From assembly GCF_016433145.1 (NCBI RefSeq), contig NC_058133.1, forward strand, positions 256,020,801-256,084,800: 64,000 nt of DNA, written 5' to 3'. Position 1 is the stretch's first letter. The number at the start of each line of letters is the position of its first letter. Shown here one piece after another: positions 2,376-22,503 of the stretch. Under the pieces are notes generated by a model. That model worked only from the letters and a program-made list of their open reading frames with translations. It was not told the origin of the DNA and ran no database searches. The translations under genes were made by a program, and so were the position numbers. Origin of the DNA: Gracilinanus agilis. Taxonomy: Eukaryota.

Positions 2376-5300
2376 CTAGGGCAAGGGTGGCCCATTGACA
2401 CCCGGGTGGTAGAAGGCACAGTTGTTCTCGTAGCGGCAGCTGCCCTTCATCATGAAGTGTCGGCATACAGGGCGGCTTGACATATCTGTGGAAGTAGTAG
2501 TATGGTAGTTAGATGGACATTAGAGGCCTCAGAGAGAAGGAATGACCCTTGTCCCTTTCCCCTCCATCACTATCGCTACCACTAGACTTGGGGAAACAAT
2601 TCGGGGTAGAATATGGGAAATTCTAGGACTTCTAAAGGATATAAAAGGAGTTTTAACTATTATGTAGCTATTTCATAGGGTACACTCACCTCCTCCATGG
2701 CCATGGGGGTCATGTCCTCTGTGGCCTCCATGACCAGGCCCATCATGGCCACGATGCTCATGGGGGGGTGGGCCTCGGTGGTCATGGCCTCGATGGCCAG
2801 GGCCATCATGAGGACGATGACCATGGGGTCCACCATGACCAGGGCCATCATGAGGACGGTGGCCACCACCTCCACCCATTCCTCCACCAGGGCCACCTCG
2901 TCCATTGGGAGGTCCTCCCCCAGAGCGGCCTCCCCGGCCTCCTCGAAATGGAGGAGGTTCATTTCCGCCTCGACCCCCTCGGCCTCTATGGTATGGCCCA
3001 GGACCAGGTCCTGGCCCTCCTCGCATTGGACCACCTCGCATGGGATCTCCTGGACCATCCCAGAAGGGGTCACCCCCACGAGGAGGAGGGGGTGGGCCCA
3101 AAAGTCGTGGACCCACTGGACCACCAGGCCCACCAGGACCTCCATGGGGACCTACAAAGAAAGAGACATTTGCATGTTGGTCAGGCTCATGACTATGTTT
3201 CTGTTCACACTTCTTCCTGTATTTAGGTTAATCTCATACTCCCTTTTCAGGATCCTAGAGAAATATCCATCCCACTCACCTGGCATAGGGCCTCCAGGGC
3301 CAGGGGGAAAATGTTGCATGCCTTTGGGGCCACTGGGGCCTCCTGGACCTCCAGGTGGAAAACCATTAGCCATTGGGGCAGGTCCCAAAATCCCATGGGG
3401 CACTAAATTAAGAGAAAGAAAAAAAATTTAAGACAGATTCTAGGATTAATATCACCACCCTGAGGATCTACCTCCCAATAAATACATAGGCCCCAGTTTA
3501 AAAAGTGAGAACTAGTCTAACTCAATCTGATCAAATTAAAATAAAGCCTTAACTTATTTTAGGAACTATTCCATTCTCTCTTTACTCCCTTCCTACTGGC
3601 ATTTTTCTTGTCTCTTTATAAGTTCCTTTTCTAAGACCATTCCCTTACCTCACACCTCCAATTTTTAATTGGGTCATATCTGGCTGTGCTTCACCTCTAA
3701 ACCTAAAGTGGGCTTCCTCCCCTCCTCCCCCAGGTCCCTGGGGCTGGCCCTGCAGGTTACCCAGCAACTGCTTGATCTTATCCGAGTAGTCTGGTTGTTT
3801 CAGCAGCTCCTCTGAAGGGTGACTATTGGGGCTTCCCTGTGAAAAGGGGTAGAGTAGTTAGAAAAGAGGTCAGTCAGGAGATATGGGGATAGCAGAAATC
3901 AAAAGCATAACTGGAGAGGGAAGAATGGCTGAAGGAGAAGGCAATACCAAGTAGGAGGGATAATCAGGGAGATAAAGTTACAGAAGAAGGCAAAAAAGGA
4001 GAACTTTGTGAAATGGTTAATGTCTCACCATTATGGAAGTAAGGATCTCCTGGACATTGATGCCACCACCTCCTGGACCCTGGGGACTCTTTCCAGCACC
4101 CATACTTCCCATAAGGTTGGCCAGGACTGGAGGCAGCTTGGAGCTACCTGACCCATCAGGGGAACCACCTGGTCCACCAGTCTCTAATGCCTCAGAATAT
4201 GGGGTCTCATCCAGGGAACATTCCTAAAGTTATAAAAAATCAGAATAATGATAAATCAAACATGTCAACATGAAACACAGACAACTCCACCCCAACAGCC
4301 ACTTAGACAAATATTGAAAAGACAGAAATACTCCAAATACCCTACCTCATCCAAAGGAATGAGTTTTGGAGGAACAGGTTCATATGACTCGGGGTCAGGC
4401 TCATGAGGACTGTCAGGGACACTGTGCAGGGAAAAAAATGATATTAAGATTACTTTTTCAGTAAGTCCAGATTCCCAGTAATTTCTCACCTTATCCCTTT
4501 CTTAACCAACTGTGCCTCACTGAGTTTTATCCCCTGCTCACCTCTCCTTGGATAAGAAGAGTTCCTGTAGGATTCCTTTCACACGTTCAGCCTGGACATA
4601 GCGCTCTTGGCTATTGCCACCCGGGGAAACAAGGGGCGAAGGTAAGGCCAAGGGCCGGGGGCATACCCATGCCACCTTCTCTTCCATATTGTCATTGCTT
4701 AGACGCCGAGCTGTCTCAAAAGCATGACGGTCCGACAATATCTCTCTCTTGGCTGCTTCACCAAAGTCCTTGATCTTGTTCACATTAACTATTTTTATTT
4801 ATTTTGTTGGGAGGTGTGGGATAGAGGGAAGGAAAAGAAGGAGAAAAGAACACAGAGGAGTTAGGCCATATGGACCTTTCCAAGATCCCATTACCCTCCA
4901 TCTTTTACAGCTCCAAGGTGCCCCTGTGTATCAATCTACCCTCTTACCTCGCTCAGTCTCATCCAGTTCAAAGTAAAAGTATTCTCTCAGTTTACCTTCT
5001 TCAGGCCATGTCACAGTCTTTCTCTTCCGGCCCTTCCTTGTCAACTGGCTTGGATCCCCAGGGCTCTCCACTGGTTTTGCATCCAGCACTCCTGTGTCCA
5101 AGGAGGCTACAAAAGAAAAAAGTATTAAAGGACTATAAGAAGGGGCAGCTGGGTAGCTCAGTGGAGTGAGAGTCAGGCCTAGAGACAGGAGGTCCTAGGT
5201 TCAAATCTGGCCTCAGCCACTTCCCAGCTGTGTGACCCTGGGCAAGTCACTTGACCCTCATTGCCCACCCTTACCAATCTCCCACCTATGAGACAATACA

Positions 5301-11300: not shown

Positions 11301-11534
11301 CCCCCCTTTTCCCTAATGTTACTGTTCTCAAGACTTCCTACGACAATCATAATCATGTACTATAGATCCACTTCTTTTTTTGGTCATCTAATCTTAGAAA
11401 TCCATTTTAATGGCAATTTATACATACCTAAAGATCTTGGCTATTCCTTCTGCACTTTTGACTTCTCCATCTCGACCAAGGAAGCTGTCTAGGCCTTTAA
11501 GGAGTTCTTTAGGGTCAATGGGGCCCGAGCCCAT
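2376..11534 (-). CDS. PPP1R10: PP1 regulatory subunit 10 (PNUTS), 18 coding exons, 845 aa
   Basis: Coding exons in transcript order: 11534-11428, 10406-10320, 10199-10064, 9888-9837, 7898-7821, 7428-7255, 7019-6914, 6603-6491, 6013-5913, 5728-5581, 5106-4948, 4788-4542, 4409-4346, 4223-4029, 3836-3761, 3402-3280, 3151-2690, 2485-2376; all GT-AG, sum 2538 nt, open. Starts [16 protein letters not shown]; TFIIS-N-like region; RVxF-type PP1 motif RKRKTVTW; RGG and His/Gly region; C-terminal CCCH finger [20 protein letters not shown]. Confidence 0.97.
5142..5328 (+). mobile_element. tRNA-derived SINE (SINE1_Mdo type), young copy
   Basis: GGGGCAGCTGGGTAGCTCAGTGG head, GGTTCAAAT B-box, A tail, TSD AAAGGACTATAAGA. 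Confidence 0.9.
6642..6830 (+). mobile_element. tRNA-derived SINE (SINE1_Mdo type), young copy
   Basis: Near-identical to the 5142 copy; TSD AAAAATCTGCTGCTGT. Confidence 0.9.
7465..7720 (+). mobile_element. MIR/CORE SINE
   Basis: CORE motif TTGGTTTCCTCATCTGCAAAATGG ... GGATTGTTGTGAGGATAAATGA. Similar copies at about 33600-33830, 44090-44200 (-) and 62860-63080. Confidence 0.75.
8810..9130 (+). mobile_element. Old marsupial L1-like 3' fragment
   Basis: GATGCAATGTGAAGTGAGCAGAACCAAGAGAACAAT..GAATTCTGATCAA pattern; a related copy lies at about 60900-61340. Confidence 0.55.
9175..9357 (+). mobile_element. tRNA-derived SINE, older diverged copy
   Basis: Degenerate head, GGGCAAGTCAC core and A-rich tail. 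Confidence 0.7.
11039..11220 (+). mobile_element. tRNA-derived SINE (SINE1_Mdo type)
   Basis: Full head, core and A tail; TSD ATT(T/C)CATGTTGAT. Confidence 0.9.
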
Positions 11535-14500
11535 GATGATAAAGCCTGGGGGAAGGGAGAAGATTGAGTAAAAGATTGTATGTCAAAGATTGTATCAGGA
11601 TTATTTTCAATAATGCACTATTCTTCCTAATCATCCATCTGATATTAACATGACAAACTAGAGTGCTTAATAATTCTTTTAATTTCTACCAAGCAAGAGG
11701 CCAAGTGGCTATTTAGCCACTCTTAGTGATCCAGAAATGAAGAAACTTGAGACTGTAATCACTAAAAAGAGAAGTGAGGGCACAACATATGGTTATATAT
11801 GTTTATAAGATGTGAACACCATTGCTGGAAATATTTCTTTCCTTTCCATATTCATCCCCAGGCTGTAGATAAAGGGCCCAAGACCCAAGGTCCTAAAATA
11901 ATATGCCTTTAAAAGGCTAATTTTATGTCAGATGAATCTGACTGTTCCCAAAACACAAACATCGTATTAGATATTTGGTTAAATATTCCTAGATCTGAAT
12001 ATGGTTCATTTATTCTTAGATTCCCACCTAGATAAACAAGTCTTAAGAACTGGGAGCTATCAACATCAGGTTTCAATATTTCTGTTCTAAATTATTCTTA
12101 TAAATTTAGCTTAGGGGATGGGAAATACAGTGAAGTCCTTAAAAAGTTATCCTCCTAAGGATTCAGGCATCACCCAGTACATAGGTAGAATGTGATAGAT
12201 TACATTGATAATACTGGGAACAAGGAACAAATTTAAAATTGGGAAAACAGTATGGGAAAGAGGTAGAAGCAGAGACATTTAAGAAGCTATAAATTAGAGA
12301 AGTTTGCTCTCTTATCTCATATAGAATAAAAGTTTGGGCTACATGTACAGTTATTTATTAATAACAAATCAATAATAAAAATATTTTGGTCAACTTGAAA
12401 ATTTCAGAAGTAATGATGGTAATCAAAGAATTTCATCAGCTTCCTCAATTTCCAAGGCCTATGTATAGGAATTTATGAACTGAATATAAAATAAGGGAGC
12501 CAGGAGTGAAAAAATGACATTTAAAAAAAAGTAGTTCTCTTCTATTTCTTCATCAAAAGACAGTTATGAAAGGAAGAATTGCTATAAGAGACAAAGATTA
12601 GGGTACGAATAATTTCTATGAAAGATTCTACAAATTATGTAAGGTTAGATAGGAGATAAGCTTAGGATAGGGTTTTCAAACAATATTTCTCCAAACAAAG
12701 GCTCTTTTGAATCAGAGGAATATCTTTGTACTGGGTCCAAGGGTGATATAAGCTTTATTGCTTATTTTCTATGACTGCCCACGGCCTACCCCCAACATCT
12801 GTAAGAAAGTGCAGATATGTCTCAAGAGAAAAGGTGGTTTTCCTTCTTGTCCCTTGAGGAAACCTATAGTTTATCCAATTTTAAGAAAGTAAACTTAGAG
12901 GCAAAAAGGCTACTTTTTGAAAACAAAGAAATGTGCTTTTAAGGTCAGAATCCTTAAGATGATTCGGAAGACAAAAGCCAAGTATTAACACTCAAACTTT
13001 ATCTCTTATCTTCCAGCTCTCCCAAGTGAGTAACTTATGAGTGAATAAAAGAGGAGCAGAAGGGCCATGAGAACCAAAAAATAAGAGATATGGGGAAAGA
13101 CATTTGTAGAGAACCATTTCTTGGACTCTGCAACTTGATGCACTGAATTTAAGATATAGAAATGAGGGGGAAATTCTGAAAAGTTAATAGAGCTTTGGAA
13201 ATTGTAAGGGATTTAAAAAAGTTCCTGTTGAATTACCAATGTTGCTTTTTTGTTCCTTCCATGGGGGAAGGAAATAAGCTGGGCCAGAGATCAAAGGAAA
13301 GGAGGGAGCTTTAAATAAAATTTCCCTAATAGAATGAAATTCTGATGTTATCAATTTTTTGGTTTGGCACACTCCTATTAATCCTTATACAAATTTGAAT
13401 GGTCAAAGAGATAAAGGGTTTTCTCTCAAGTAGCATGGGCCAGGATCATAAGATATGCAGAGGCTTTCTGATATGTGAAATTGTAATAGCATTAAATCTG
13501 AATATCATACTAACGACCACCAAGAGACAAGTTAAAAAAGCAAAATAATTATGGTCCATACCAGATAATCTGTTGAGGATGAAGTACCTTAGGGTGACAA
13601 GTCCTAACTTTATGAAAGAATACTGTTTTCCATTCTATTCCAATACATACTTGACCTCTACTTATCTATTGAAGAACCAGGTACAAGGAACACTTAAGAT
13701 TCTTTCCATTCCCAAATCACTGACCCTTTCCTACAAAAAGCTAGGCCTGCTACCCCAACTAGATTATCTTCAAGGACCTGAAGGAAACCCCAAATATTAC
13801 CTTCTTTTTATTGAATAGAAAGCAAAATAACCCATTAGCTTCAAGCTACAAGATTAATGCCCATCAAAATAAATTCAAATAGGAACGGAAAATAACTTCT
13901 AACCTATACAAAAAGCTAAGCAATGGAGAGAAGAGAGAACAGCAGAAATTAGATGTAGCCATCAGAGAAAAGTGTCATGTTCACCTCCATCCCAAGTCTA
14001 ATCTCAAAGAAGTGAGTAGTTTTAAACAATTACCATAAAAAAGTTTTCATGAGAACCTGTCACTACCACTGGAGATAGGAGATAACCTCCCAGGAAAACT
14101 GTAGCTTTAGACCAAATAAAGTTCAGCATTCAGTTAAACCTACAAATTTACTTTCAGGTACCATAAAGGACATCTTGTGGTGGGGGAGGGAGAAGCAGAA
14201 CCAGTGTGCCACTGAACCAGAAAAGAACAAAGTAAGAGTTAAATGTTCCTACTCTAGGACTATAGCAGGAAACTCAAGACACAATGGAATGACATCTCTT
14301 AATTGATATGAAGTTATGGACTTCCAAATTCATAATGATAACTGGTTATTAAAAATACTCTTGTTTTAGAGATTGGTATGTAAAAATCAGGAGAGTAAAT
14401 GAGCTTGAGGTAATTTCTGGAAAAAAAGGGTCCAAAAATGAAGTCAAATGAGCTCATTCCCTTAAAGAATGGGAAAACTTACAAAAAATATGGAGTAGAA

Positions 14501-17500
14501 GTGGGAAGAAAATGGAGAAAAACTCTTCACTCCTCTGGGAGAGAAGCCAGCCAGATTCATGCATCCCAATAAGCAGGCCAACTTTCCTGGGGGAGCAGGA
14601 AGAGAGTCCCTGACCAAAGAAGTAAACAAAATAAAAATAAAACAAATCCCTACTCTCTCAGAGACTTTACTCTCATAGCCACCCTAATACAGGATTCTAA
14701 TACCTGTTGCCAGATTCTCATTATACAGATTGGAGTGCTTTATCTTTTGGCTTTCCTTTTAAAAAGCTAGGAAAGCTTGGGGCAGCACACAGAAATGAGT
14801 CCTTAAGGGTATGCAAAGGATCCAGCCTTGAAATCTTATTCTATTCTGTTGATTTCACTAATGATGGAATAAAAGACTGTGTTAATCAACTGGTTGGAGT
14901 AAAAGTAAACTCTAAATTTCATTATTACTAAGAGGATGAGTGGGTCCAGGGTTAACCCACATTTAACTTCAAAGTGAGATCTCTTAAATATTGCCTATCC
15001 CAAAGATACAATTATTTCCTTTTAACAAGAGGGGAAAGGATGCCATGTTTAGCATGGGTCATATTCTATTGTATTTCTGGACAAATTTTGTTATTGGCCT
15101 AAAATTCACATTGCTTTCCCCCCCTAGAGACTTAAAAGGCACCTGTTATTTGGTGGTCAAATTATTCTGAGTTGTGCCTTGCCCTGACAGAACAACTTAG
15201 TAAGATTACATAGCTAGCTCTTAGGAGAAATACGAATCGTGGCCTATATTCATGCAGCAAAGTTCTGGATTCAGTGTCTTTCAGTACCTGTTCTCTCATT
15301 TATATCCCTACCAGGCTTTTATGCACTTGGATTGCAGGAGGATTCCAGCCTGCTTATCTTTAATAGAGAGAAATGCCAGGATCAATTGTTTTATAAGGCA
15401 GCAAAGGAGCCAATAATATTTAACTCAAGCTTATGATTAGTAAGTAGGTTGGCACTCCCAAGTTGGTTTCTAAAGCTTTTTATTCCTCAACTTTCACACT
15501 GCAGAGAAACTCCCATAATTATCTCCCCAGTCTAGTTTAAAGGAACTAAATGGGGTATTATTTTCACATCCCCAGGCATATAGCAGAGACAATAATTTCT
15601 CCACCATCTAGAGTGCTGGGGGCTAACTAAAACCTCAAAAACAATGGGAGTGTTGATAGGTCCAACATAGGGTGCAAAGTATCTTGGACCTTCTCAAATA
15701 TGAACTTAGGAAATCCTTAAGGGTATTATATACATCCAGCAGAAAATTTGCTGGGGAAGAGAATGATCAAGTTCATAATGGCTTCTGAACTTTGCCATGA
15801 ACCTGAGGATCTTAAAACTTAAAAAGATTTTTGGAAAAGATTTTATAATTTGGGGGGGAAAATAGAGGAAAGGACAGGACACAAACACCAGCCTTGAGTA
15901 CCTGCCATGGCTTGGACATGCACTGGTTGCTACAGCACTGCATGAGTTGAAAATGGAGAACAGAACATTGTTTCCATTATTAGCTAGAAGTTTGGGCGGG
16001 AGAAAAAAAGGAAAAAAAATCCAAAAAAAAAAATGATTCTTTGGAAAACAGAAATGAAGGTTGTGAAATGTAATTAATACCAGAAAGGTTTTGCTTACCA
16101 GAAAACGAAGCTTGACTCCCCCTGCCTTGAGTTTACAACTGCGGCCTTTTTCCTAAAGATTCACTCCTCATCCTAGTACCAATGTACAGGAGGCTAAGCA
16201 ACTGGAGGTGGTACAGCACGGAACACAAAAGTTTACCCCAAAAACCAGAAAAGATGGGAAGGAGGAAGATGGGAAGTTTAGAGGAAAACCTTCTAGCACC
16301 CACCCTTACCCCTCAAAAAGGTGAAAATGTCCCCAGACTAAGGTTTGGCTCTAATAAAAGCCTAACAATGGAAATTCATATTTAGACCAGAGATTTAATC
16401 TTTCCTTTCCAGACTTGTAAACTCACCCAGATTACTTTTATCCTTTGGGCTCAGAGCTACTTTAGGATAAGGAAAAGAAATGGGTAAACTCCATTCTGTT
16501 TCCCAAATGTGTACATGTAAAGGAATTCCTAGGATATTGTATACAGAAGAAAAACTGGTCCTGTTGCTAAGCCTCAAACCTACCCACAGGCACCCCCTGT
16601 AGAAGAGAAGCAACTCCTACAGACCTAACAGATTTCTACTGGCTTGTTGGATAAAAAGGGGTGTTTTGTGAAAGTTAAAAGAACAGAAACAATTAAGATC
16701 AAATCTGTAGAGATAGAAAAAGAAGATAATCAAGTCCCAGGCTCCATTCCTCCCAAGTTTGAGCATGCCTCAAAAGGCAAAAACTCAGGGGGTGGAGTTT
16801 CAGGAGGGTGGAGAGGAGTGAAGGAAAGCGGATTACATCACCTTTCCAGACTGCTCCTCCCCCTTTAACCAACCTCCTAAACCAGCCCTATGCTCCGGCT
16901 GGCAAGAGGGAAGAGGAGGGAGAAAAACAACAAAGCAGGGACGCCATCTTGCAATGGAGAAGAGACCCAAGGAGGAAAAAACATCTACGGTTTGCCGTAA
17001 AGGTTACAGTACAAACAGCCCATTAACACCCGTTCCCAGTTTTAAAAAAGAAACAAAACAAAACAAAAAACACCCCCCCCCAAACTGTGTTTAACTTTTT
17101 AAACCTCATTTGATTTGGCAAGAACTTTGTAAAAACAAAGGCAATTAAAATGTTACTTAAAAGTTTCTCCTGCATGGAGTAGGGTAAGAATTTGCAGTTG
17201 AGGGTCAAAACTGCTAATACAGCCCACCCCCGTTCTATACTACAGATAAAGGGGGAGGGTATATGGGCCCCTCCCAACAAAGGAGGCCAAGGTGGGAAAA
17301 GGACAGGAGAAAAATGGGTAAAGACACAACCTGCAACGCCGCTCAGAAGAGACAAAAGGACAAGGAAAAGTCGCCATATTGAAGCAGGGAAGAAAAAAAA
17401 ATTCCTTTTAACGACACAAATCTTTTAGAAATCTAGCATTCAATTGCACTAAATGGCCTTTAAAAATTACACGCCTTAATTCCCCACATTGCCCCCCCCC

Positions 17501-18257
17501 AAATTTCCACCCCCTGTAACTGCACCCATTTAAAAAATCAAGTTAAAGGTTATAACCATTTTTTTCTTCTTTAAAAAAAAATCTGCAAACTGCAACAATT
17601 ACAAGACATTCTTTACCTTCCCAACTAACACTTTTGGATGTATTGGCACTACCCTGGTTTTAAGTGTCTTGCAATCTTTATTCGTAGATTGCCACCTATG
17701 TAAAGCACACAAATATATATACCTCAAGCAAATTACATTAAAATATAAAGAGAGGATTTTAACCATTAAGTCGTAGCCAGCTACTTTCTAATATTATATC
17801 TGCGCATCTCCTTACCCTGCAATCTTTATGTACAGATTGCTTATTAATCTGGCAAATTGAAAGGCGCCCCTGCTTGTCTCACACACAAAGAAGTGGTACT
17901 TTTAGGCCACAAGATCCACGTCTTTTGTATGTGAGCTCATTAACCCTTCCGAAAGACTGCTGGCATCGAGAGGAAGGGATCCCATTCCTCCTTATAAAAA
18001 GAAATCGAACTCTTATGGCTTTGGCAGTCTGGAAAATTGGCTGGATTACCAAGGGTTAACCATCAAGAAAATCCTCACTTGTCGGCCCCCCCACCCTCTC
18101 CGTGCCTGCACCAGGGCAGGGAAGAGGGAGGTGGTAGGGGAGAGAGAACAAGACTTTTAAGACCTAATGTTTTTTGTTTTTTTTTAATGGAGACTCAAGC
18201 GACCGGATTGGTCGTTCTCCAGCTCAATTATTTTTTGTCTACGATCTCATTTCTTCC

Positions 18258-18388
18258 NNNNNNNNNNNNNNNNNNNNNNNNNNNNNNNNNNNNNNNNNNN
18301 NNNNNNNNNNNNNNNNNNNNNNNNNNNNNNNNNNNNNNNNNNNNNNNNNNNNNNNNNNNNNNNNNNNNNNNNNNNNNNNNNNNNNNNN
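18258..18388. other. Assembly gap (131 N)
   Basis: Run of N bases seen directly. Confidence 1.
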
Positions 18389-18851
18389 AAAAAATAAAAC
18401 CAACCAGGACCCAAAGCTTAATTACTTGGGGGACCTCATTGGATCAAAAAGTCTTTTAAAAAATAAAGCCAACTCAGGATTCATTACCCACTCCACTTAA
18501 GGAGAGGGTCTTAGAAACAAAAACAAAAACAAAAACAAAAAACTGAGTGGATTCAAAAAGGAGACGATGGATGGGCAGATTTGGCGGGAGTTGGGAGTTG
18601 GAGTAAAGGTGGTTGATTATTTTTGATAGATTTTGTGGTGATGGTCCTTCAGCCACAGATTTGAGTCCCAAGAAGCTTGGGCTGGGAGAGGGGACGGGAA
18701 ACAAGATAGGGTGATGGGGCAGAGAAGACACAAGTGGTTGGGTTGGTAGCTGCTGCTTCCCCCCCCCTCGAAGGATCCTTTAGATTTAGATGCTGTTACG
18801 GCTGCTTCTTTTTTCCTCGTGGCCGGGCCGTTTCCTCCGATTAAATTCGAA

Positions 18852-19124
18852 CCTGGGAAGAGGAAATAAGGGAGGAAACGAAAACGTCATTATTACTGGC
18901 TACAATATTTTCTACGCCTCGTTTTCAACCTAACAGGCTTCCCCAGAAGCACCCTCCAGCCTCCAAAATCTAAGAAAGATTAAAATAAGCTCCATTGTCG
19001 CCCGCCGCCATTTCGCTACTCTACCACTACAGAGCCCCGCAACATACCAACCGACATATAACCCGTACTCACCTCTAAACGAACCCCAGAATGGCGGCGG
19101 CTCGCTCGGAAGACGCCTTTTATA
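18852..19124 (-). other. PPP1R10: PPP1R10 5'-UTR exon 1 / intron 1 / start of non-coding exon 2
   Basis: TATAAAA on - strand at 19124-19118; strong donor GAG|GTGAGT (exon ends 19073); strong acceptor TTATTTCCTCTTCCCAG| (exon starts 18852). The 3' end of exon 2 is unresolved and may lie in or near the N gap. Confidence 0.6.
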
Positions 19125-19730
19125 CAAGGGCACCGCCCCGCGCACACTAGCGCGCTCACGAGATACTGACACCTCGCGCCATTGTGCGCGAGGCGCAAGC
19201 TAATTGGTCAACCACATCAAGGATCCACAAGCTGATTGGCTGTCCTACCATAACCTACGCTCCGCCTATCCCTCAACTCACTCTTCCGCTTTCCACACCC
19301 AACCCTCGGCTCGCGACTAGGATTGCGACGATTGGTTGGGACCCGCCCTCTCTTCTTTCCCTGATCTTCTTCCTCCCCACCCTTTAGGCGTCAAGCCTTA
19401 CGCTAGGTTGGCCCAACTGGCCTCGCGCATGCGCACTAGTCGCACCAGGGTCCAAAATCAACCGCAAAATTATTCAGAAGCACAAGATTCAGTAGTGGTT
19501 CTAGGATCCATAGCGAACTGGCTAAAGCAATTGTAATTTTGATAGCGAATTCTATTGTGACGCAGTTGAAATTGGTCGTCTTCGCTCCTACGCCCCTACT
19601 GGCGCATGCGCATCTAGTCACATCCCAGCATTGCGCGTTCGTCGCATTAGTCCCACCCAGCTTTCTTACGGACATGCGCAGTTTCTTCTGGTCCCCATTC
19701 CTCCCTTAGCCGTACGCCAAGATGGCATCC
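19000..19730. promoter_or_regulatory. Bidirectional CpG-rich promoter of PPP1R10 and MRPS18B
   Basis: CpG-rich; TATA (- strand, 19118-19124); GC box 19130-19139; ATTGG/CCAAT at 19203, 19235 and 19331; NRF1-type GCGCATGCGCA at 19425-19435 and 19602-19612, partial at 19673-19680; YY1-type CGCCATTT/AATGGCGGC near 19006 and 19090 and AAGATGGC over the MRPS18B ATG. Confidence 0.88.
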
Positions 19731-22503
19731 TCTCTCCTAACCCTGCTACTTAGGCGGCTCCCGGGCCTCACACCTATCGAAGGTGTCCGCTGGGTGCAGG
19801 TATCTATGCAGTTTCCTCTCTACCGCTCTTTTTCCCCTTCGCAGGATGCGGCCCTGGTTAAAGTTGGCTTCGGCTGCCTGTCTTCTCCTTCCCGCCCGGC
19901 CCGGAAGGAGCTTCCTTCTAGGGTCGGGAAAGGAAGGAGAAAGCTTACCGCTTTCCTGTCTAGATAGTTTTGGCTATACCACTACCTACTCTCTTGCGTC
20001 TTGCCCCCTGGACTTGGTGCGCATGCTGAGGGGTGCTACATAGTTCCTGAGAGTTGTCTCTTTCCTGAGTACTTTTTACATGTTCCCATGGCAACAGGCA
20101 ACAAGGGGAATATGGGTGTGCTGCGTTGCCATGGTGGCCTAGCAGGAGCCCTTCTCTTTCCACGTGGCCGAAGCACCCCCCCACATACACACACTCTTTA
20201 TCTTTGCAAGCACTGTTTTCATAATGTCGGGTAGTGAAGGAGAAAAAAAAGGTTTGACCAAGAAATTCCATTCTTATACTTAATGTAAGCTCTTAAGAAC
20301 TCCTCGAATATTAACTAGCTCCTTCTATCCATTGATACACACATTGTATACAGGCCTAACTAGCTCCTTGAATAAACAACGTTTTAATTCTTGGATACCA
20401 GGAGCGGCCCTTGATGCTTCTGACATTTTAAATGGTGCTTATGATCAAGTTAACACTGATGTATTTATCTCTACTATGGATGTAGAGAGGATATGAGAGG
20501 CTTAACAAGCAGTTCCATCTTGTCCTGAAGGTCTCTTTCCAGTCAGACTACTATCCACAACCCTTCTAGAGAACTTTGGGATCCAAATATTACTTCCCCA
20601 GCTCCCTGCTGCCCAGGTATCTTGAACCCCATGGCATTACTACTCACCACTTTGAAGGTCCTTAGTTGGGGTTAAGGGGGAGGGCTGCTTCCCACAGTTG
20701 CTATTCCCTGAAATGGGGCAAGTTAGCATCAATGGTGAATTAGTTATGGTCATTATGGGGTTAATTACAGGGCTGAGGCCTTTGATCTCAGCGTTGGGAC
20801 TCAAATTGTTCACTCTTCTGGAATGGGAAACTGATTTTTATAAAGCAGGATAGGACCAATGATTCAGAGACAAGAGTAGAGATGATGAACATATGTATAT
20901 CACAAGTATTCTGTGATCTTAATGTAGCAACCTTTTCCTGGATACTTTATGCAACTCTTAGCAACTTAGGTATCCCTTTCCTTTAATTACCTGAAACAGC
21001 TACCCAGTTTATTCCCCCCCTGACATCATTTTCTTTTCTAGGAATATAGATTTCTTGTATCCTTAATGTTCTCTTCTTTCTGTTCAAATAGATGAGATAG
21101 GAATGATCTTTTAATAACTTAAAACTGCACTAAGACTTTTGGGACACCTCTCTCAGAATCTAATTTACCTATTTGTCATCTCACATTACTTCATCACCTT
21201 TGGGCCTTTTGCTAAGATCAAAGTGTACTTTCTGTACATTCTTCCTATACATCACTATATAAACTTTGACACCTTTACTGTACCTCAAGAATTCTTGAGG
21301 GACAGATAGGGAATGACGAACTAGATATTTAATTTCCCTCCTAAACCTTCCCCCTTACTCTCTTTTCATAGGCTACTCCTCGGGCACTGTGTACCAAAGC
21401 TCCCCCTGAGGAAGAATCTTCCACCCCAGTCTCTCCTTATCAGGATGCTCCCTGGGAATATCTGGAGACAGAAGGTACATATCATCATAAGGAAAATGGG
21501 AAGAAGGAAAGGAAAATGTAAAGACTAAGGGAAGGCAGAGTAACCAATTCAGAAGATTGTGATGGGTAGAACCTAAAGGGAAATGCTCTCTCTATCCAGT
21601 TATTCCTCTTCTCAACTTTTATGTGCACTATATTCTATACTTCTTACCTCAACTTTTTCACACATTATTCCTTGTACCTTTTTACATGTTGAATTTCTAT
21701 ATATCCTCTTCTATCTCTATTCTTCTCAAGTAGTGCCTCTTTCATATATAATGTTTTGGGATTTTGACATACTTATCATTTATATTGTATATTATAGTTA
21801 ACAGTATTTGTTTCCTATAGAATTTAAGTTCTATGAATGCAAGAAAATGAGTGTTTTTGCTAAATTTTATGTCTCCCCCAGAATTTAACTCTATACCAAA
21901 TGCTTAATAAATATTTTAGTAAGAATACAAAGGCGCCATCGCCAGGGAAAAATTATTAAAATAGAGCAAAAGTTGAAAATGGTCAGTATAAAAGAGAAGA
22001 GCAAAAAAAGTAGACTTAAAAAAAAGCTCTCTGGAAAAAATAGAGGGAAAGATTACCACCAAGTTAGATGTAAAAAATACTACTCAAGGGGGCATCTGGA
22101 TGGTTTAGTACAGTTATGGTCATACTACAGCCAGATGCAGCCCCCTGAAATGCTCTATCCAGAGAAGGGACATTATTTCTAATCTGACGAATACAATGAG
22201 TAGGATACAATACAATGAAACTTCCAAAGAATTGCCTTAGAAACAGACTGACAGATGAGCATTTCCTTTCCTTTGGCCCCCCTCTTTAAAAAGTTTGCCC
22301 ATCACTGGTTTAGTAGATTGAGAGCTAGGCCCAGAGACAGAAGGTCCTGGGTTCAAATGTGACCTCAGACACTTCCTGTGTGTTCCTGGGCAAGTCACTT
22401 GACCCCCATTGCCTAACCCTTACCACTCTTCTGCCTTCGAGCTAATACATAGTATTGATTCCAAGATGGAAGGAAAGGGTTATTTAAGGGGGGGGGGGGG
22501 AGG

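What the first reader, a model, noticed from the sequence alone, without database searches (positions are those of the whole stretch)
17617..17848. Twin GCAAUCU-N8-AGAUUGC hairpins in candidate micro-exons of the PPP1R10 5'-UTR intron, one overlapping AAUAAA
Seen: two copies 148 bp apart of a perfect 7-bp inverted repeat with an 8-nt spacer (17671-17692 and 17819-17840), sharing TGCAATCTTTAT. On the transcript they read GCAAUCU-GUACAUAA-AGAUUGCA and GCAAUCU-ACGAAUAA-AGAUUGCA; the second contains AAUAAA, the first UGUA plus CAUAAA. Each lies between plausible splice sites: 33 nt at 17848-17816 (UUUGCCAG| ... AGG|GUAAGG) and 79 nt at 17695-17617 (UUUACAUAG| ... AAG|GUAAAG). No transposon character is visible. 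Established: PNUTS-PP1 controls Pol II elongation and termination, and other 3'-end factors such as PCF11 autoregulate through intronic poly(A) sites. Inference: a structured splice/poly(A) switch or protein-binding hairpin pair that attenuates PPP1R10. A dimeric DNA-binding site is the alternative. I know of no description of it.
Basis: partly seen in the sequence, partly recalled or inferred. Interest (0 to 1): 0.78.

Follow-up and report, generated by a model that had tools for sequence, protein, structure and literature searches.

The report
Ancient twin hairpins in PNUTS intron
Two copies of a 22-letter hairpin-forming sequence in the untranslated leader intron of PPP1R10 (PNUTS), a gene that helps stop transcription, are real and almost letter-perfect from carp to frog, crane, mouse and marsupials, so they must do something, but the proposed mini-exons are not the conserved part.

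Summary
GCAATCT-N8-AGATTGC stands at 17819-17840 and 17671-17692 on the minus, gene-sense strand. It is the only duplicated stem-plus-loop hairpin in the window.

The main result is comparative. The same element lies at the same place, between the MRPS18B/PPP1R10 promoter and the ATG exon, in every locus whose fetched flank reaches that region. Tasmanian devil, mouse, crane and frog have 2 copies each; a cyprinid fish has 3. Copy 1 is 22/22 identical in all six species. Across 13 copies the arms show one change, A to G, which keeps a G.U pair. The loop always ends AUAA, so each hairpin shows NAUAAA.

In therians the hairpins sit in a roughly 1-kb block, 93% identical opossum-devil and 77% opossum-mouse. 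In crane, frog and fish little beyond the 22-mers is conserved.

By homology with three eutherian mRNA contigs the intron is intron 2. Those mRNAs skip both "micro-exons". The copy-1 donor is absent in crane, frog and fish.

Best reading (about 0.4): RNA hairpins showing poly(A)-signal-like hexamers, followed by a conserved U1-site-like GGUA, forming a PCF11/CSTF3-type premature-termination control. Main rival (about 0.3): palindromic protein-binding DNA sites in an intronic promoter or enhancer with two conserved YY1-like motifs.

No reads could be laid. No paper describes the element.

The parts
17819..17840 (-). Hairpin copy 1: GCAAUCU-GUACAUAA-AGAUUGC (holds UGUA and CAUAAA).
   Evidence: It is 22/22 identical in devil, mouse, crane, frog and fish. 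It folds alone at -9.5 kcal/mol, z -4.2. It lies inside the longest exact opossum-mouse run of the block, 17805-17866.
17671..17692 (-). Hairpin copy 2: GCAAUCU-ACGAAUAA-AGAUUGC (holds AAUAAA).
   Evidence: The arms and the loop's final AUAA are identical in all species. The first four loop letters vary: ACGA, AGGA, AGCA, AGCC. It folds at -8.4 kcal/mol, z -4.2.
17264..18257 (-). Therian conserved non-coding block in intron 2 that holds both hairpins. Its upstream limit is hidden by the N-run at 18258-18388.
   Evidence: About 93% identity to devil over about 900 nt. 77.5% identity to mouse over 1035 nt. The rest of the intron is 67% identical to devil and mostly unalignable to mouse.
17876..17890 (-). 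Upstream conserved word CTTTGTGTGTGAGAC.
   Evidence: The 16-nt TCTTTGTGTGTGAGAC matches fish L009:5714-5729 exactly, in the same order relative to copy 1.
17931..17947 (-). Upstream conserved word AGGGTTAATGAGCTCAC.
   Evidence: Identical in devil and mouse. TGAGCTCAC is present in fish, and there is a 14/15 match in crane.
17592..17622 (-). Splice-donor-like or U1-site-like AAG|GUAAAG, followed by UGUCUUGUAAUUGUUGC, about 54 nt after copy 2.
   Evidence: Conserved in devil and mouse. Fish has GGGTAT...TGTCTTGTCGATTTTGC about 45 nt after its last copy.
17372..17380 (-). First YY1-like word AATATGGCG.
   Evidence: AA.ATGGCG is found in the same order downstream of the hairpins in devil, mouse, crane and fish. 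That it is a YY1 site rests on my recall of the consensus, not on a motif scan.
16942..16950 (-). Second YY1-like word AAGATGGCG.
   Evidence: paired with the first at 247-430 nt spacing in opossum, devil, mouse, crane and fish.
18389..18854 (-). Non-coding exon 2 of PPP1R10. Its 3' end and donor fall inside the N-run.
   Evidence: Eutherian mRNA contigs L003-L005 align here and to mouse L002:3875-4392. The exon 2 to ATG-exon junction is verified in mouse.
19072..19125 (-). Exon 1 of PPP1R10 (non-coding), downstream of CCAAT and TATA words in the CpG island.
   Evidence: mRNA contig L004:4-58 aligns at 85%. The sequence shows the donor GAG|GTGAGT. CpG island.
11449..11545 (-). Start of the ATG exon (exon 3), with the ATG at 11534-11532.

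Best explanation
Shown. The two 22-mers are orthologous copies of a cis-element at least as old as bony vertebrates: GCARUCU-NNNNAUAA-AGAUUGC. It is present 2-3 times in the 5'-UTR intron that follows non-coding exon 2 of PPP1R10, always in the sense orientation. It is under very strong purifying selection.

Inferred. The element acts in the nascent RNA. Each copy folds into a 7-bp hairpin whose loop displays a poly(A)-signal-type hexamer (CAUAAA, AAUAAA or UAUAAA). The last copy is followed about 50 nt later by a conserved 5'-splice-site-like GGUA (a U1 snRNP site) and by U/GU-rich sequence.

Proposed mechanism. Together these would form a gated, promoter-proximal cleavage/polyadenylation or termination site. 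It would set how many polymerases go on to the ATG exon. That would give homeostatic control of PNUTS, itself a termination factor, in the manner of the conserved intronic poly(A) sites of PCF11 and CSTF3. The invariant arms would be read sequence-specifically by a protein, as SLBP reads the histone hairpin. That would explain the absence of covariation.
For: - Conservation: there are exact matches to the 14 arm letters in 6 of 6 loci that include the region, with 13 copies in all. Roughly 2x10^-4 exact matches per locus would be expected by chance.
- Copy 1 is 22/22 identical in six species.
- In crane, frog and fish the flanks are diverged, so the 22-mers are the conserved core.
- Every copy folds alone, at -8.4 to -9.5 kcal/mol with z -2.8 to -4.2, and pairs 100%.
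- The only arm change, A4 to G in fish copy 3, keeps a G.U pair on the sense strand but breaks the DNA palindrome.
- NAUAAA is present in 13 of 13 copies. By my knowledge, all three variants seen are used poly(A) hexamers.
- U/GU-rich sequence follows the last copy in fish (UUUUUUGUGUUGUGUGCUU), crane and frog.
- GGUA plus UGUCUUGU is conserved between fish and therians after the last copy.
- Precedent: PCF11 has conserved tandem AATAAA in a conserved first intron that mediates autoregulation from zebrafish to human (PMC6458999). CSTF3 has a conserved intronic poly(A) site controlled by U1 (cited in PMC7471841).
- Lead only: 14 transcriptome-sized runs from 9 studies each hold 0.60-0.63 of the sampled words of 17300-18200. 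That is the share expected if an RNA covered 18200 down to about 17620-17650, just past copy 2. Devil shares only 0.20 of these words.
Against:
- The runs are only guessed to be RNA.
- There are no compensatory changes, so RNA pairing is not demonstrated. The single G.U has roughly a 1-in-5 chance of arising anyway.
- Downstream U/GU elements are weak in therians for both copies.
- Copy 1 has no good downstream element in frog.
- The block also carries DNA-type signals: two conserved YY1-like motifs, CCAAT words and a raised CpG ratio. NATAAAG can equally be read as a TATA-like box.
- The canonical mRNA contigs give no hint of a short isoform.
Confidence: 0.4

Rival explanations
1. DNA-level element. 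The 22-mers are palindromic binding sites for a dimeric or paired DNA-binding protein, or TATA-like NATAAAG boxes framed by inverted repeats. They would lie in an ancient promoter-proximal intronic enhancer or alternative promoter of PPP1R10, or of the head-to-head MRPS18B/PPP1R10 pair.
For: - The palindrome is perfect and never extends beyond 7 bp in any of 13 copies.
- There is no covariation.
- The module contains two YY1-like AA.ATGGCG motifs conserved in order from fish to mammals, plus CCAAT words.
- CpG observed/expected is 0.3-0.5 at 17000-18250, against 0-0.2 in the rest of the intron.
- Head-to-head synteny with MRPS18B is kept from fish to mammals.
- The constant 0.6 share in small runs could equally reflect open-chromatin or ChIP libraries.
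Against: - All 22 positions of copy 1, spacer included, are invariant over about 430 My. That is more than known transcription-factor sites usually need.
- Half-sites whose centres are 15 bp apart, on opposite faces of the helix, are unusual for a homodimer.
- I could match the half-site AGATTGC to no factor from memory, and no motif library was available.
- The one arm change breaks the palindrome but keeps RNA pairing.
Confidence: 0.3
2. RNA hairpins bound by an RNA-binding protein that controls splicing or retention of the long 5'-UTR intron 2, or the fate of an exon-2 read-through RNA, without acting as a poly(A) site. One example: copy 1 carries UGUACAUA, which fits the Pumilio consensus UGUANAUA as I recall it.
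For: - The hairpins are stable.
- The loop of copy 1 is invariant in six species.
- The position, about 350-670 nt after the exon-2 donor, is similar in mouse, crane and frog.
- Therians have a strong U1-type site directly after copy 1.
Against: - Copy 2 lacks the UGUA core in every species, so a Pumilio reading covers only one copy.
- There is no expression or binding data.
- Pumilio acts mainly on cytoplasmic 3' UTRs (my knowledge).
Confidence: 0.17
3. One reading: the hairpins lie in two cassette micro-exons, 17848-17816 and 17695-17617, whose inclusion switches or poisons the PPP1R10 transcript.
For: - All four splice dinucleotides are present and are conserved in opossum, devil and mouse.
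- The donors rank 2nd and 6th of 375 in the intron.
- The second donor region is partly conserved to fish.
- A share of 0.63 would also fit an RNA ending at the 17617 donor.
Against: - Three eutherian mRNA contigs skip both candidate exons.
- The acceptor and donor of the first micro-exon are absent in crane, frog and fish, although the 22-mer is identical.
- 19 comparable pseudo-exon pairs exist in the same intron.
- Within therians the whole block is conserved, so conserved splice letters carry no extra weight.
Confidence: 0.1
4. The two copies are a chance pair, a neutral local duplication, or transposon ends.
For: Single 7-bp hairpins are common: 90 in the window.
Against: - 0 of 40 simulations give a duplicated hairpin.
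- The flanks are unrelated.
- There are only two copies in 64 kb.
- Orthologous copies exist in six vertebrate lineages at the same gene position.
Confidence: 0.01

Closest known systems
PCF11 PAS1: conserved tandem AATAAA signals in the conserved first intron of PCF11, which autoregulate by premature cleavage/polyadenylation (PMC6458999).
   Same: It is a termination or 3'-end factor gene with a promoter-proximal intron. It has tandem hexamers of poly(A)-signal type. It is conserved from fish to mammals. The logic would be homeostatic attenuation.
   Different: In PPP1R10 each hexamer sits in the loop of an invariant 7-bp hairpin, and the hexamer's first letter varies (C, A or U). The intron lies in the 5' UTR, so no truncated protein would result. 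Use as a poly(A) site is not shown.
The CSTF3 (CstF-77) conserved intronic poly(A) site, under feedback and U1 snRNP control (Luo et al. 2013, cited in PMC7471841).
   Same: A conserved intronic hexamer has a nearby U1-type site. In therians GGUAAGG follows copy 1 directly, and GGUAAAG lies 54 nt after copy 2, the latter partly conserved to fish.
   Different: No evidence of usage or of a U1 effect was obtained here. No hairpin architecture is described for CSTF3, to my knowledge.
The HIV-1 poly(A) hairpin, where AAUAAA is held in a hairpin whose stability tunes use of the signal (my knowledge, not checked in a paper here).
   Same: A hexamer presented in the loop or upper stem of a small hairpin.
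   Different: The HIV-1 element is viral, single-copy and has a different sequence. In PPP1R10 the arms are invariant rather than merely complementary.
The histone mRNA 3' stem-loop bound by SLBP (my knowledge).
   Same: A short hairpin whose stem letters are almost invariant across paralogous copies and across animals, because a protein reads the sequence. It is also a 3'-end processing signal.
   Different: The histone hairpin has a different sequence and geometry (6-bp stem, 4-nt loop), lies at the mRNA 3' end and uses U7. The PPP1R10 element is not a member.
Vertebrate conserved non-coding elements (ultraconserved-type intronic blocks).
   Same: A roughly 1-kb therian block with a 62-nt exact opossum-mouse run. 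Islands of it are conserved to teleosts.
   Different: The deeply conserved cores are two or three copies of one 22-nt palindrome, not a long unique stretch. The host gene is a housekeeping transcription or RNA-processing factor rather than a developmental regulator.

Membership tests
Intronic poly(A)-site attenuator (PCF11 PAS1 / CSTF3 type) | A conserved hexamer of AAUAAA type in a promoter-proximal intron. | tested here: met
   NAUAAA is present in 13 of 13 copies in six species: CAUAAA, AAUAAA and UAUAAA. The location is 5'-UTR intron 2.
Intronic poly(A)-site attenuator (PCF11 PAS1 / CSTF3 type) | A U/GU-rich downstream element within about 40 nt of the cleavage site. | tested here: inconclusive
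   By eye it is strong after fish copy 3, good after crane copy 2, moderate in frog, and weak or distant in therians. No scoring model was run.
Intronic poly(A)-site attenuator (PCF11 PAS1 / CSTF3 type) | RNA 3' ends or poly(A) reads map just downstream, and usage responds to the level of the factor. | not testable with these tools
The only hint is the constant 0.60-0.63 word share.
Cassette micro-exon / poison exon | Flanking AG and GT splice sites conserved together with the element. | tested here: not met
   The sites are present in opossum, devil and mouse. They are absent next to the identical copy 1 in crane, frog and fish.
Cassette micro-exon / poison exon | Inclusion in spliced transcripts. 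| tested here: not met
   Three eutherian mRNA contigs join exon 2 to the ATG exon and contain neither arm. Minor isoforms are not excluded.
Structured RNA element supported by covariation | A stable fold and compensatory base changes. | tested here: inconclusive
   The fold is stable. Pairing is 100%, with 0 compensatory changes and one G.U. Invariant stems say nothing either way.
Palindromic dimeric transcription-factor site | Inverted half-sites that match a known factor's motif and lie in regulatory chromatin. | tested here: inconclusive
   The palindrome is met, and the context of YY1-like motifs and a raised CpG ratio is met. No motif library or chromatin data were available, and no factor was matched from memory.
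Transposon terminal repeats / MITE | Many copies in the genome, terminal inverted repeats and lineage-limited insertion. | tested here: not met
   There are only two copies in 64 kb. Direct identity (83%) exceeds inverted identity (73%). The element is orthologous in six vertebrate lineages.
Rfam RNA families | A match to a curated covariance model. | tested here: not met
   Window 16500-18250 gave only two sub-threshold chance hits, neither over the hairpins.
Pumilio response element (copy 1 only) | UGUANAUA in single-stranded context. | tested here: inconclusive
   UGUACAUA spans the last arm letter and loop letters 1-7 of copy 1 in all six species. It is absent from copy 2. The consensus is recalled from memory, and binding was not tested.

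The most novel reading that the evidence does not exclude
A roughly 430-million-year-old RNA attenuator. Two or three invariant 7-bp hairpins each display a poly(A)-signal hexamer and are followed by a U1 site. They sit in the leader intron of PNUTS and would sense the cell's cleavage/termination (or U1) activity. They would set PNUTS output by premature termination. That would give a second vertebrate-wide autoregulatory loop of the termination machinery besides PCF11, with a new hairpin-presented signal read by an unknown sequence-specific protein.
Probability: 0.25. Interest if true: 0.85.

Novelty: new variant of a known kind. Interest (0 to 1): 0.76.

Why it matters
PNUTS-PP1 slows RNA polymerase II after poly(A) sites and works with WDR82 and the ZC3H4 Restrictor complex. 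How its own level is set is not described in the papers I could search.

A 22-letter element kept letter-perfect from carp to marsupials, in two or three copies, in this gene's leader intron is among the most constrained short non-coding sequences one can find. It gives a precise, small target for deletion and compensatory-mutation tests.

If it is a gated premature-termination site, termination factors would share a common design of self-control. If it is a DNA site, it defines an unknown and very specific binding activity at a conserved bidirectional housekeeping promoter.

Tried and rejected
No junction, 3'-end or strand evidence exists. Local BLAST queries were split at 16108/16148.
2. Decayed 148-bp tandem duplication. 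Rejected, because the flanks are no more alike than shuffles.
3. Rfam. Nothing over the hairpins.
4. Covarying sister hairpins with other stems and an NNNNAUAA loop. None at the locus in any species.
5. Lone extra arms that could support long-range pairing to exon 2 or the ATG-exon acceptor. None are conserved.
6. Looking for RNA contigs through a called ORF in the block (17882-18052). No homologue in the protein collection.
7. U1A/U2B'' reading of AUUGCA(G/A). Rejected, because the letter after AUUGC is G or U in crane.
8. Gracilinanus look-up. Not on record.
9. Wombat, brushtail possum and wallaby. Loci were found but no DNA was served.
10. Leatherback turtle. The 10-kb flank does not reach MRPS18B and holds no copy, so this is uninformative.
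11. Literature. No paper holds the 22-mer. None links PPP1R10 to intronic polyadenylation of its own gene, poison exons, ultraconserved elements or autoregulation.
13. The N-run 18258-18388 was not filled. I infer only from mouse coordinates that the exon-2 donor falls inside it.
Full report
**Observation**

On the + strand the window reads TGCAATCTTTATTCGTAGATTGC at 17670-17692 and TGCAATCTTTATGTACAGATTGC at 17818-17840. Each is a perfect 7-bp inverted repeat around 8 letters. The two copies lie 148 bp apart and differ only at four spacer letters.

The window has 90 perfect 7-bp hairpins with 3-12-nt loops. This is the only non-trivial stem and loop length that occurs twice, and none of 40 Markov simulations gave such a pair. 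The 120 nt on either side of the two copies are no more alike than shuffled sequence. This is therefore a 22-23-nt unit present twice, not a decayed tandem duplication. Rfam has nothing here.

**Gene context**

The window carries PPP1R10 on the minus strand:
- C-terminal G/P/H-rich exon at about 2676-3227.
- An exon 82/82 identical to marsupial PNUTS proteins.
- ATG at 11534.
- A CpG island at about 18750-20100, with CCAAT and TATA words and the donor GAG|GTGAGT at 19072.

I confirmed only that the protein is marsupial PNUTS.

Three spliced eutherian mRNA contigs from Logan RNA assemblies (L003-L005, encoding 880/881-aa PNUTS) show the leader structure:
- exon 1, aligning to opossum 19125-19072;
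- a roughly 515-nt non-coding exon 2, aligning to opossum 18854 downward and ending inside the N-run 18258-18388;
- then the ATG exon.

The exon 2 to ATG-exon junction is exact against mouse genomic DNA, GGATA|GTAAGT ... CAG|AAGCC. The hairpins therefore lie in intron 2, 476 and 612 nt past the exon-2 donor in mouse and about 490 and 640 nt past it in opossum by alignment.

**Comparative result**

I obtained PNUTS proteins by a profile-free HMMER search with one exon, a word search and cluster listing. I then fetched the genomic loci.

Every locus whose upstream flank reaches the region between MRPS18B and the ATG exon holds exact matches to GCAATCT-N8-AGATTGC, on the gene's sense strand:

| Species (locus) | Copies | Positions |
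|---|---|---|
| Tasmanian devil (L001) | 2 | 4050, 4188 |
| Mouse (L002) | 2 | 4868, 5004 |
| Whooping crane (L006) | 2 | 6486, 6674 |
| Frog, Nanorana (L008) | 2 | 802, 1156 |
| Cyprinid, Sinocyclocheilus (L009) | 3 | 5790, 5898, 6088 |

The leatherback turtle flank does not reach the region. An exact 14-letter match is expected about 2x10^-4 times per locus.

Aligned, the 13 copies show:
- Copy 1 is GCAATCTGTACATAAAGATTGC, 22/22 identical in all six species, with a conserved A before it.
- Copy 2 keeps both arms and the last four loop letters. Its first four loop letters vary: ACGA, AGGA, AGCA, AGCC, and GCAC in fish.
- Fish copy 3 is GCAGTCTGACTATAAAGATTGC.
- Complementarity never extends beyond 7 bp.

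The consensus is GCARUCU-NNNNAUAA-AGAUUGC. Spacing between copies varies from 108 to 354 nt.

**Extent of conservation**

In therians the hairpins are embedded in a large block.
- Opossum 18257-17350 is about 93% identical to devil.
- Opossum 18257-17264 is 77.5% identical to mouse over 1035 nt.
- The rest of the intron is 67% identical to devil and mostly unalignable to mouse.
- The longest exact opossum-mouse run in 17300-18200 is 17805-17866, centred on copy 1.

In crane, frog and fish only islands remain. The islands are:
- the 22-mers themselves;
- TCTTTGTGTGTGAGAC and TGAGCTCAC upstream of copy 1 in fish, with a 14/15 match of the flanking word AGGGTTAATGAGCTC in crane;
- GGTA plus TGTCTTGT..ATT.TTGC about 45-55 nt after the last copy, shared by fish and therians;
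- two YY1-like AA.ATGGCG words 247-430 nt apart further downstream, in opossum, devil, mouse, crane and fish.

The 22-mers are thus the sharpest cores of an ancient multi-part module.

**Micro-exon reading**

The four splice dinucleotides exist. With a crude matrix the donors rank 2nd and 6th of 375 GT sites, but 19 similar pseudo-exon pairs occur in the same intron.

The letters are conserved in devil and mouse, yet so is everything around them. Next to the identical copy 1:
- crane has GAGCGA|...|GGGGCGG;
- frog has CCATGA|...|AGGGAGAGG;
- fish has GTCATAA|...|CACAGG.

None of these has the acceptor or a GT donor. The three mRNA contigs skip both candidate exons and hold neither arm. Cassette exons are therefore not the conserved function. 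A minor therian isoform is not excluded. The second donor region is partly conserved to fish, which fits a U1-binding site as well as a splice site.

**RNA or DNA**

Each copy folds alone into the 7-bp, 8-loop hairpin at -8.4 to -9.5 kcal/mol, with z -2.8 to -4.2. The 271-nt region as a whole is not unusually structured (z -0.76).

On the 13-copy alignment pairing is 100%. There are no compensatory changes and one A-to-G that leaves a G.U pair. That single change is compatible with RNA on the sense strand and breaks the DNA palindrome, but it has roughly a one-in-five chance of doing so anyway.

Invariant stems give no covariation signal. As I know it, they recall protein-read hairpins such as the histone stem-loop.

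Points for RNA:
- The loop always ends AUAA, so with the first arm letter it spells CAUAAA, AAUAAA or UAUAAA. All are poly(A)-signal variants (my knowledge).
- U/GU-rich sequence follows the last copy in fish, crane and frog.
- A U1-type GGUA follows the last copy in fish and therians.

Points for DNA:
- The module carries YY1-like and CCAAT words.
- The CpG ratio is raised.
- The palindrome is strictly 7 bp.
- NATAAAG can also be read as a TATA-like box.

I could not match AGATTGC to a known factor from memory, and no motif library was available.

**Expression lead**

The look-up of sequencing runs listed 14 transcriptome-sized runs (21-751 million letters) from 9 studies. Each holds 0.60-0.63 of the sampled words of 17300-18200. 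A genome-sized run holds 0.96.

Devil shares only 0.20 of these 31-mers, so the holders are the same or a very close species. A constant share independent of run size suggests a fixed boundary. An RNA covering 18200 down to about 17620-17650, just past copy 2 or its GGUAAAG, would give exactly this share.

This is a lead, not evidence.

**Comparison with known systems**

PCF11 has a conserved first intron with conserved tandem AATAAA signals that autoregulate the gene from zebrafish to human (PMC6458999). CSTF3 has a conserved intronic poly(A) site under U1 control (cited in PMC7471841).

The PPP1R10 element resembles these in gene class, position, tandem hexamers and depth of conservation. 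It differs in that each hexamer is framed by invariant hairpin arms and lies in a 5'-UTR intron.

No searched paper holds the 22-mer or describes such an element or PNUTS autoregulation.

**Verdict**

The element is ancient and under strong constraint, which I regard as near certain.

| Reading | Probability |
|---|---|
| Hairpin-presented poly(A)-type signal / premature-termination control | about 0.4 |
| DNA-binding palindrome in an intronic promoter or enhancer | about 0.3 |
| Other RNA-binding-protein role | about 0.17 |
| Therian micro-exons as the main role | about 0.1 |
| Chance, neutral duplication or transposon ends | about 0.01 |

**Limits**

There are no read-level data. Only six species were compared. 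Letters of 16109-16147 were kept out of all search tools.

Noticed in passing
Opossum 16099-16052 is 92% identical to crane L006:7903-7953, and 16107-16038 is 83% identical to mouse L002:6447-6508.
   Followed up: no
window 17372-17380 and 16942-16950 (minus strand): Two YY1-like AA.ATGGCG words, 247-430 nt apart, are conserved in order in opossum, devil, mouse, crane and fish. They may mark alternative start sites or an intronic promoter element.
   Followed up: partly
window 18258-18388: By mouse coordinates, the 131-base N-run covers the 3' end and donor of the non-coding exon 2. That junction region is also weakly conserved to crane and frog. The run was not filled.
   Followed up: no
window 17425-17446 (minus strand); L001:4440-4461: GCAATT(TT)GAATGCTAGATTTC is conserved in therians and resembles a decayed third copy: 2 mismatches in devil, a loop 2 nt shorter in opossum, and no AUAA. 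Fish has three intact copies.
   Followed up: partly
L001, L002, L006, L009 upstream flanks: The head-to-head MRPS18B/PPP1R10 arrangement is kept in devil, mouse, crane and cyprinid fish, with ABCF1 on the other side in devil and crane. The whole leader region is a shared, ancient regulatory neighbourhood.
   Followed up: partly
runs X1-X14: Fourteen small runs from nine studies hold a nearly constant 0.60-0.63 of the words of 17300-18200, whatever their size. This is unexplained. It could be a fixed transcript boundary near copy 2, or enrichment libraries.
   Followed up: partly
L006:6674-6698 (crane copy 2): The crane loop AGCAAUAA creates a second GCAAU. An alternative 9-bp hairpin, CUAGCAAU/AUUGCUAG with an AAAG loop, is predicted at about equal energy.
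   Followed up: no
window 18500-18545 (minus strand): A (TTTTG)n microsatellite lies inside non-coding exon 2.
   Followed up: no
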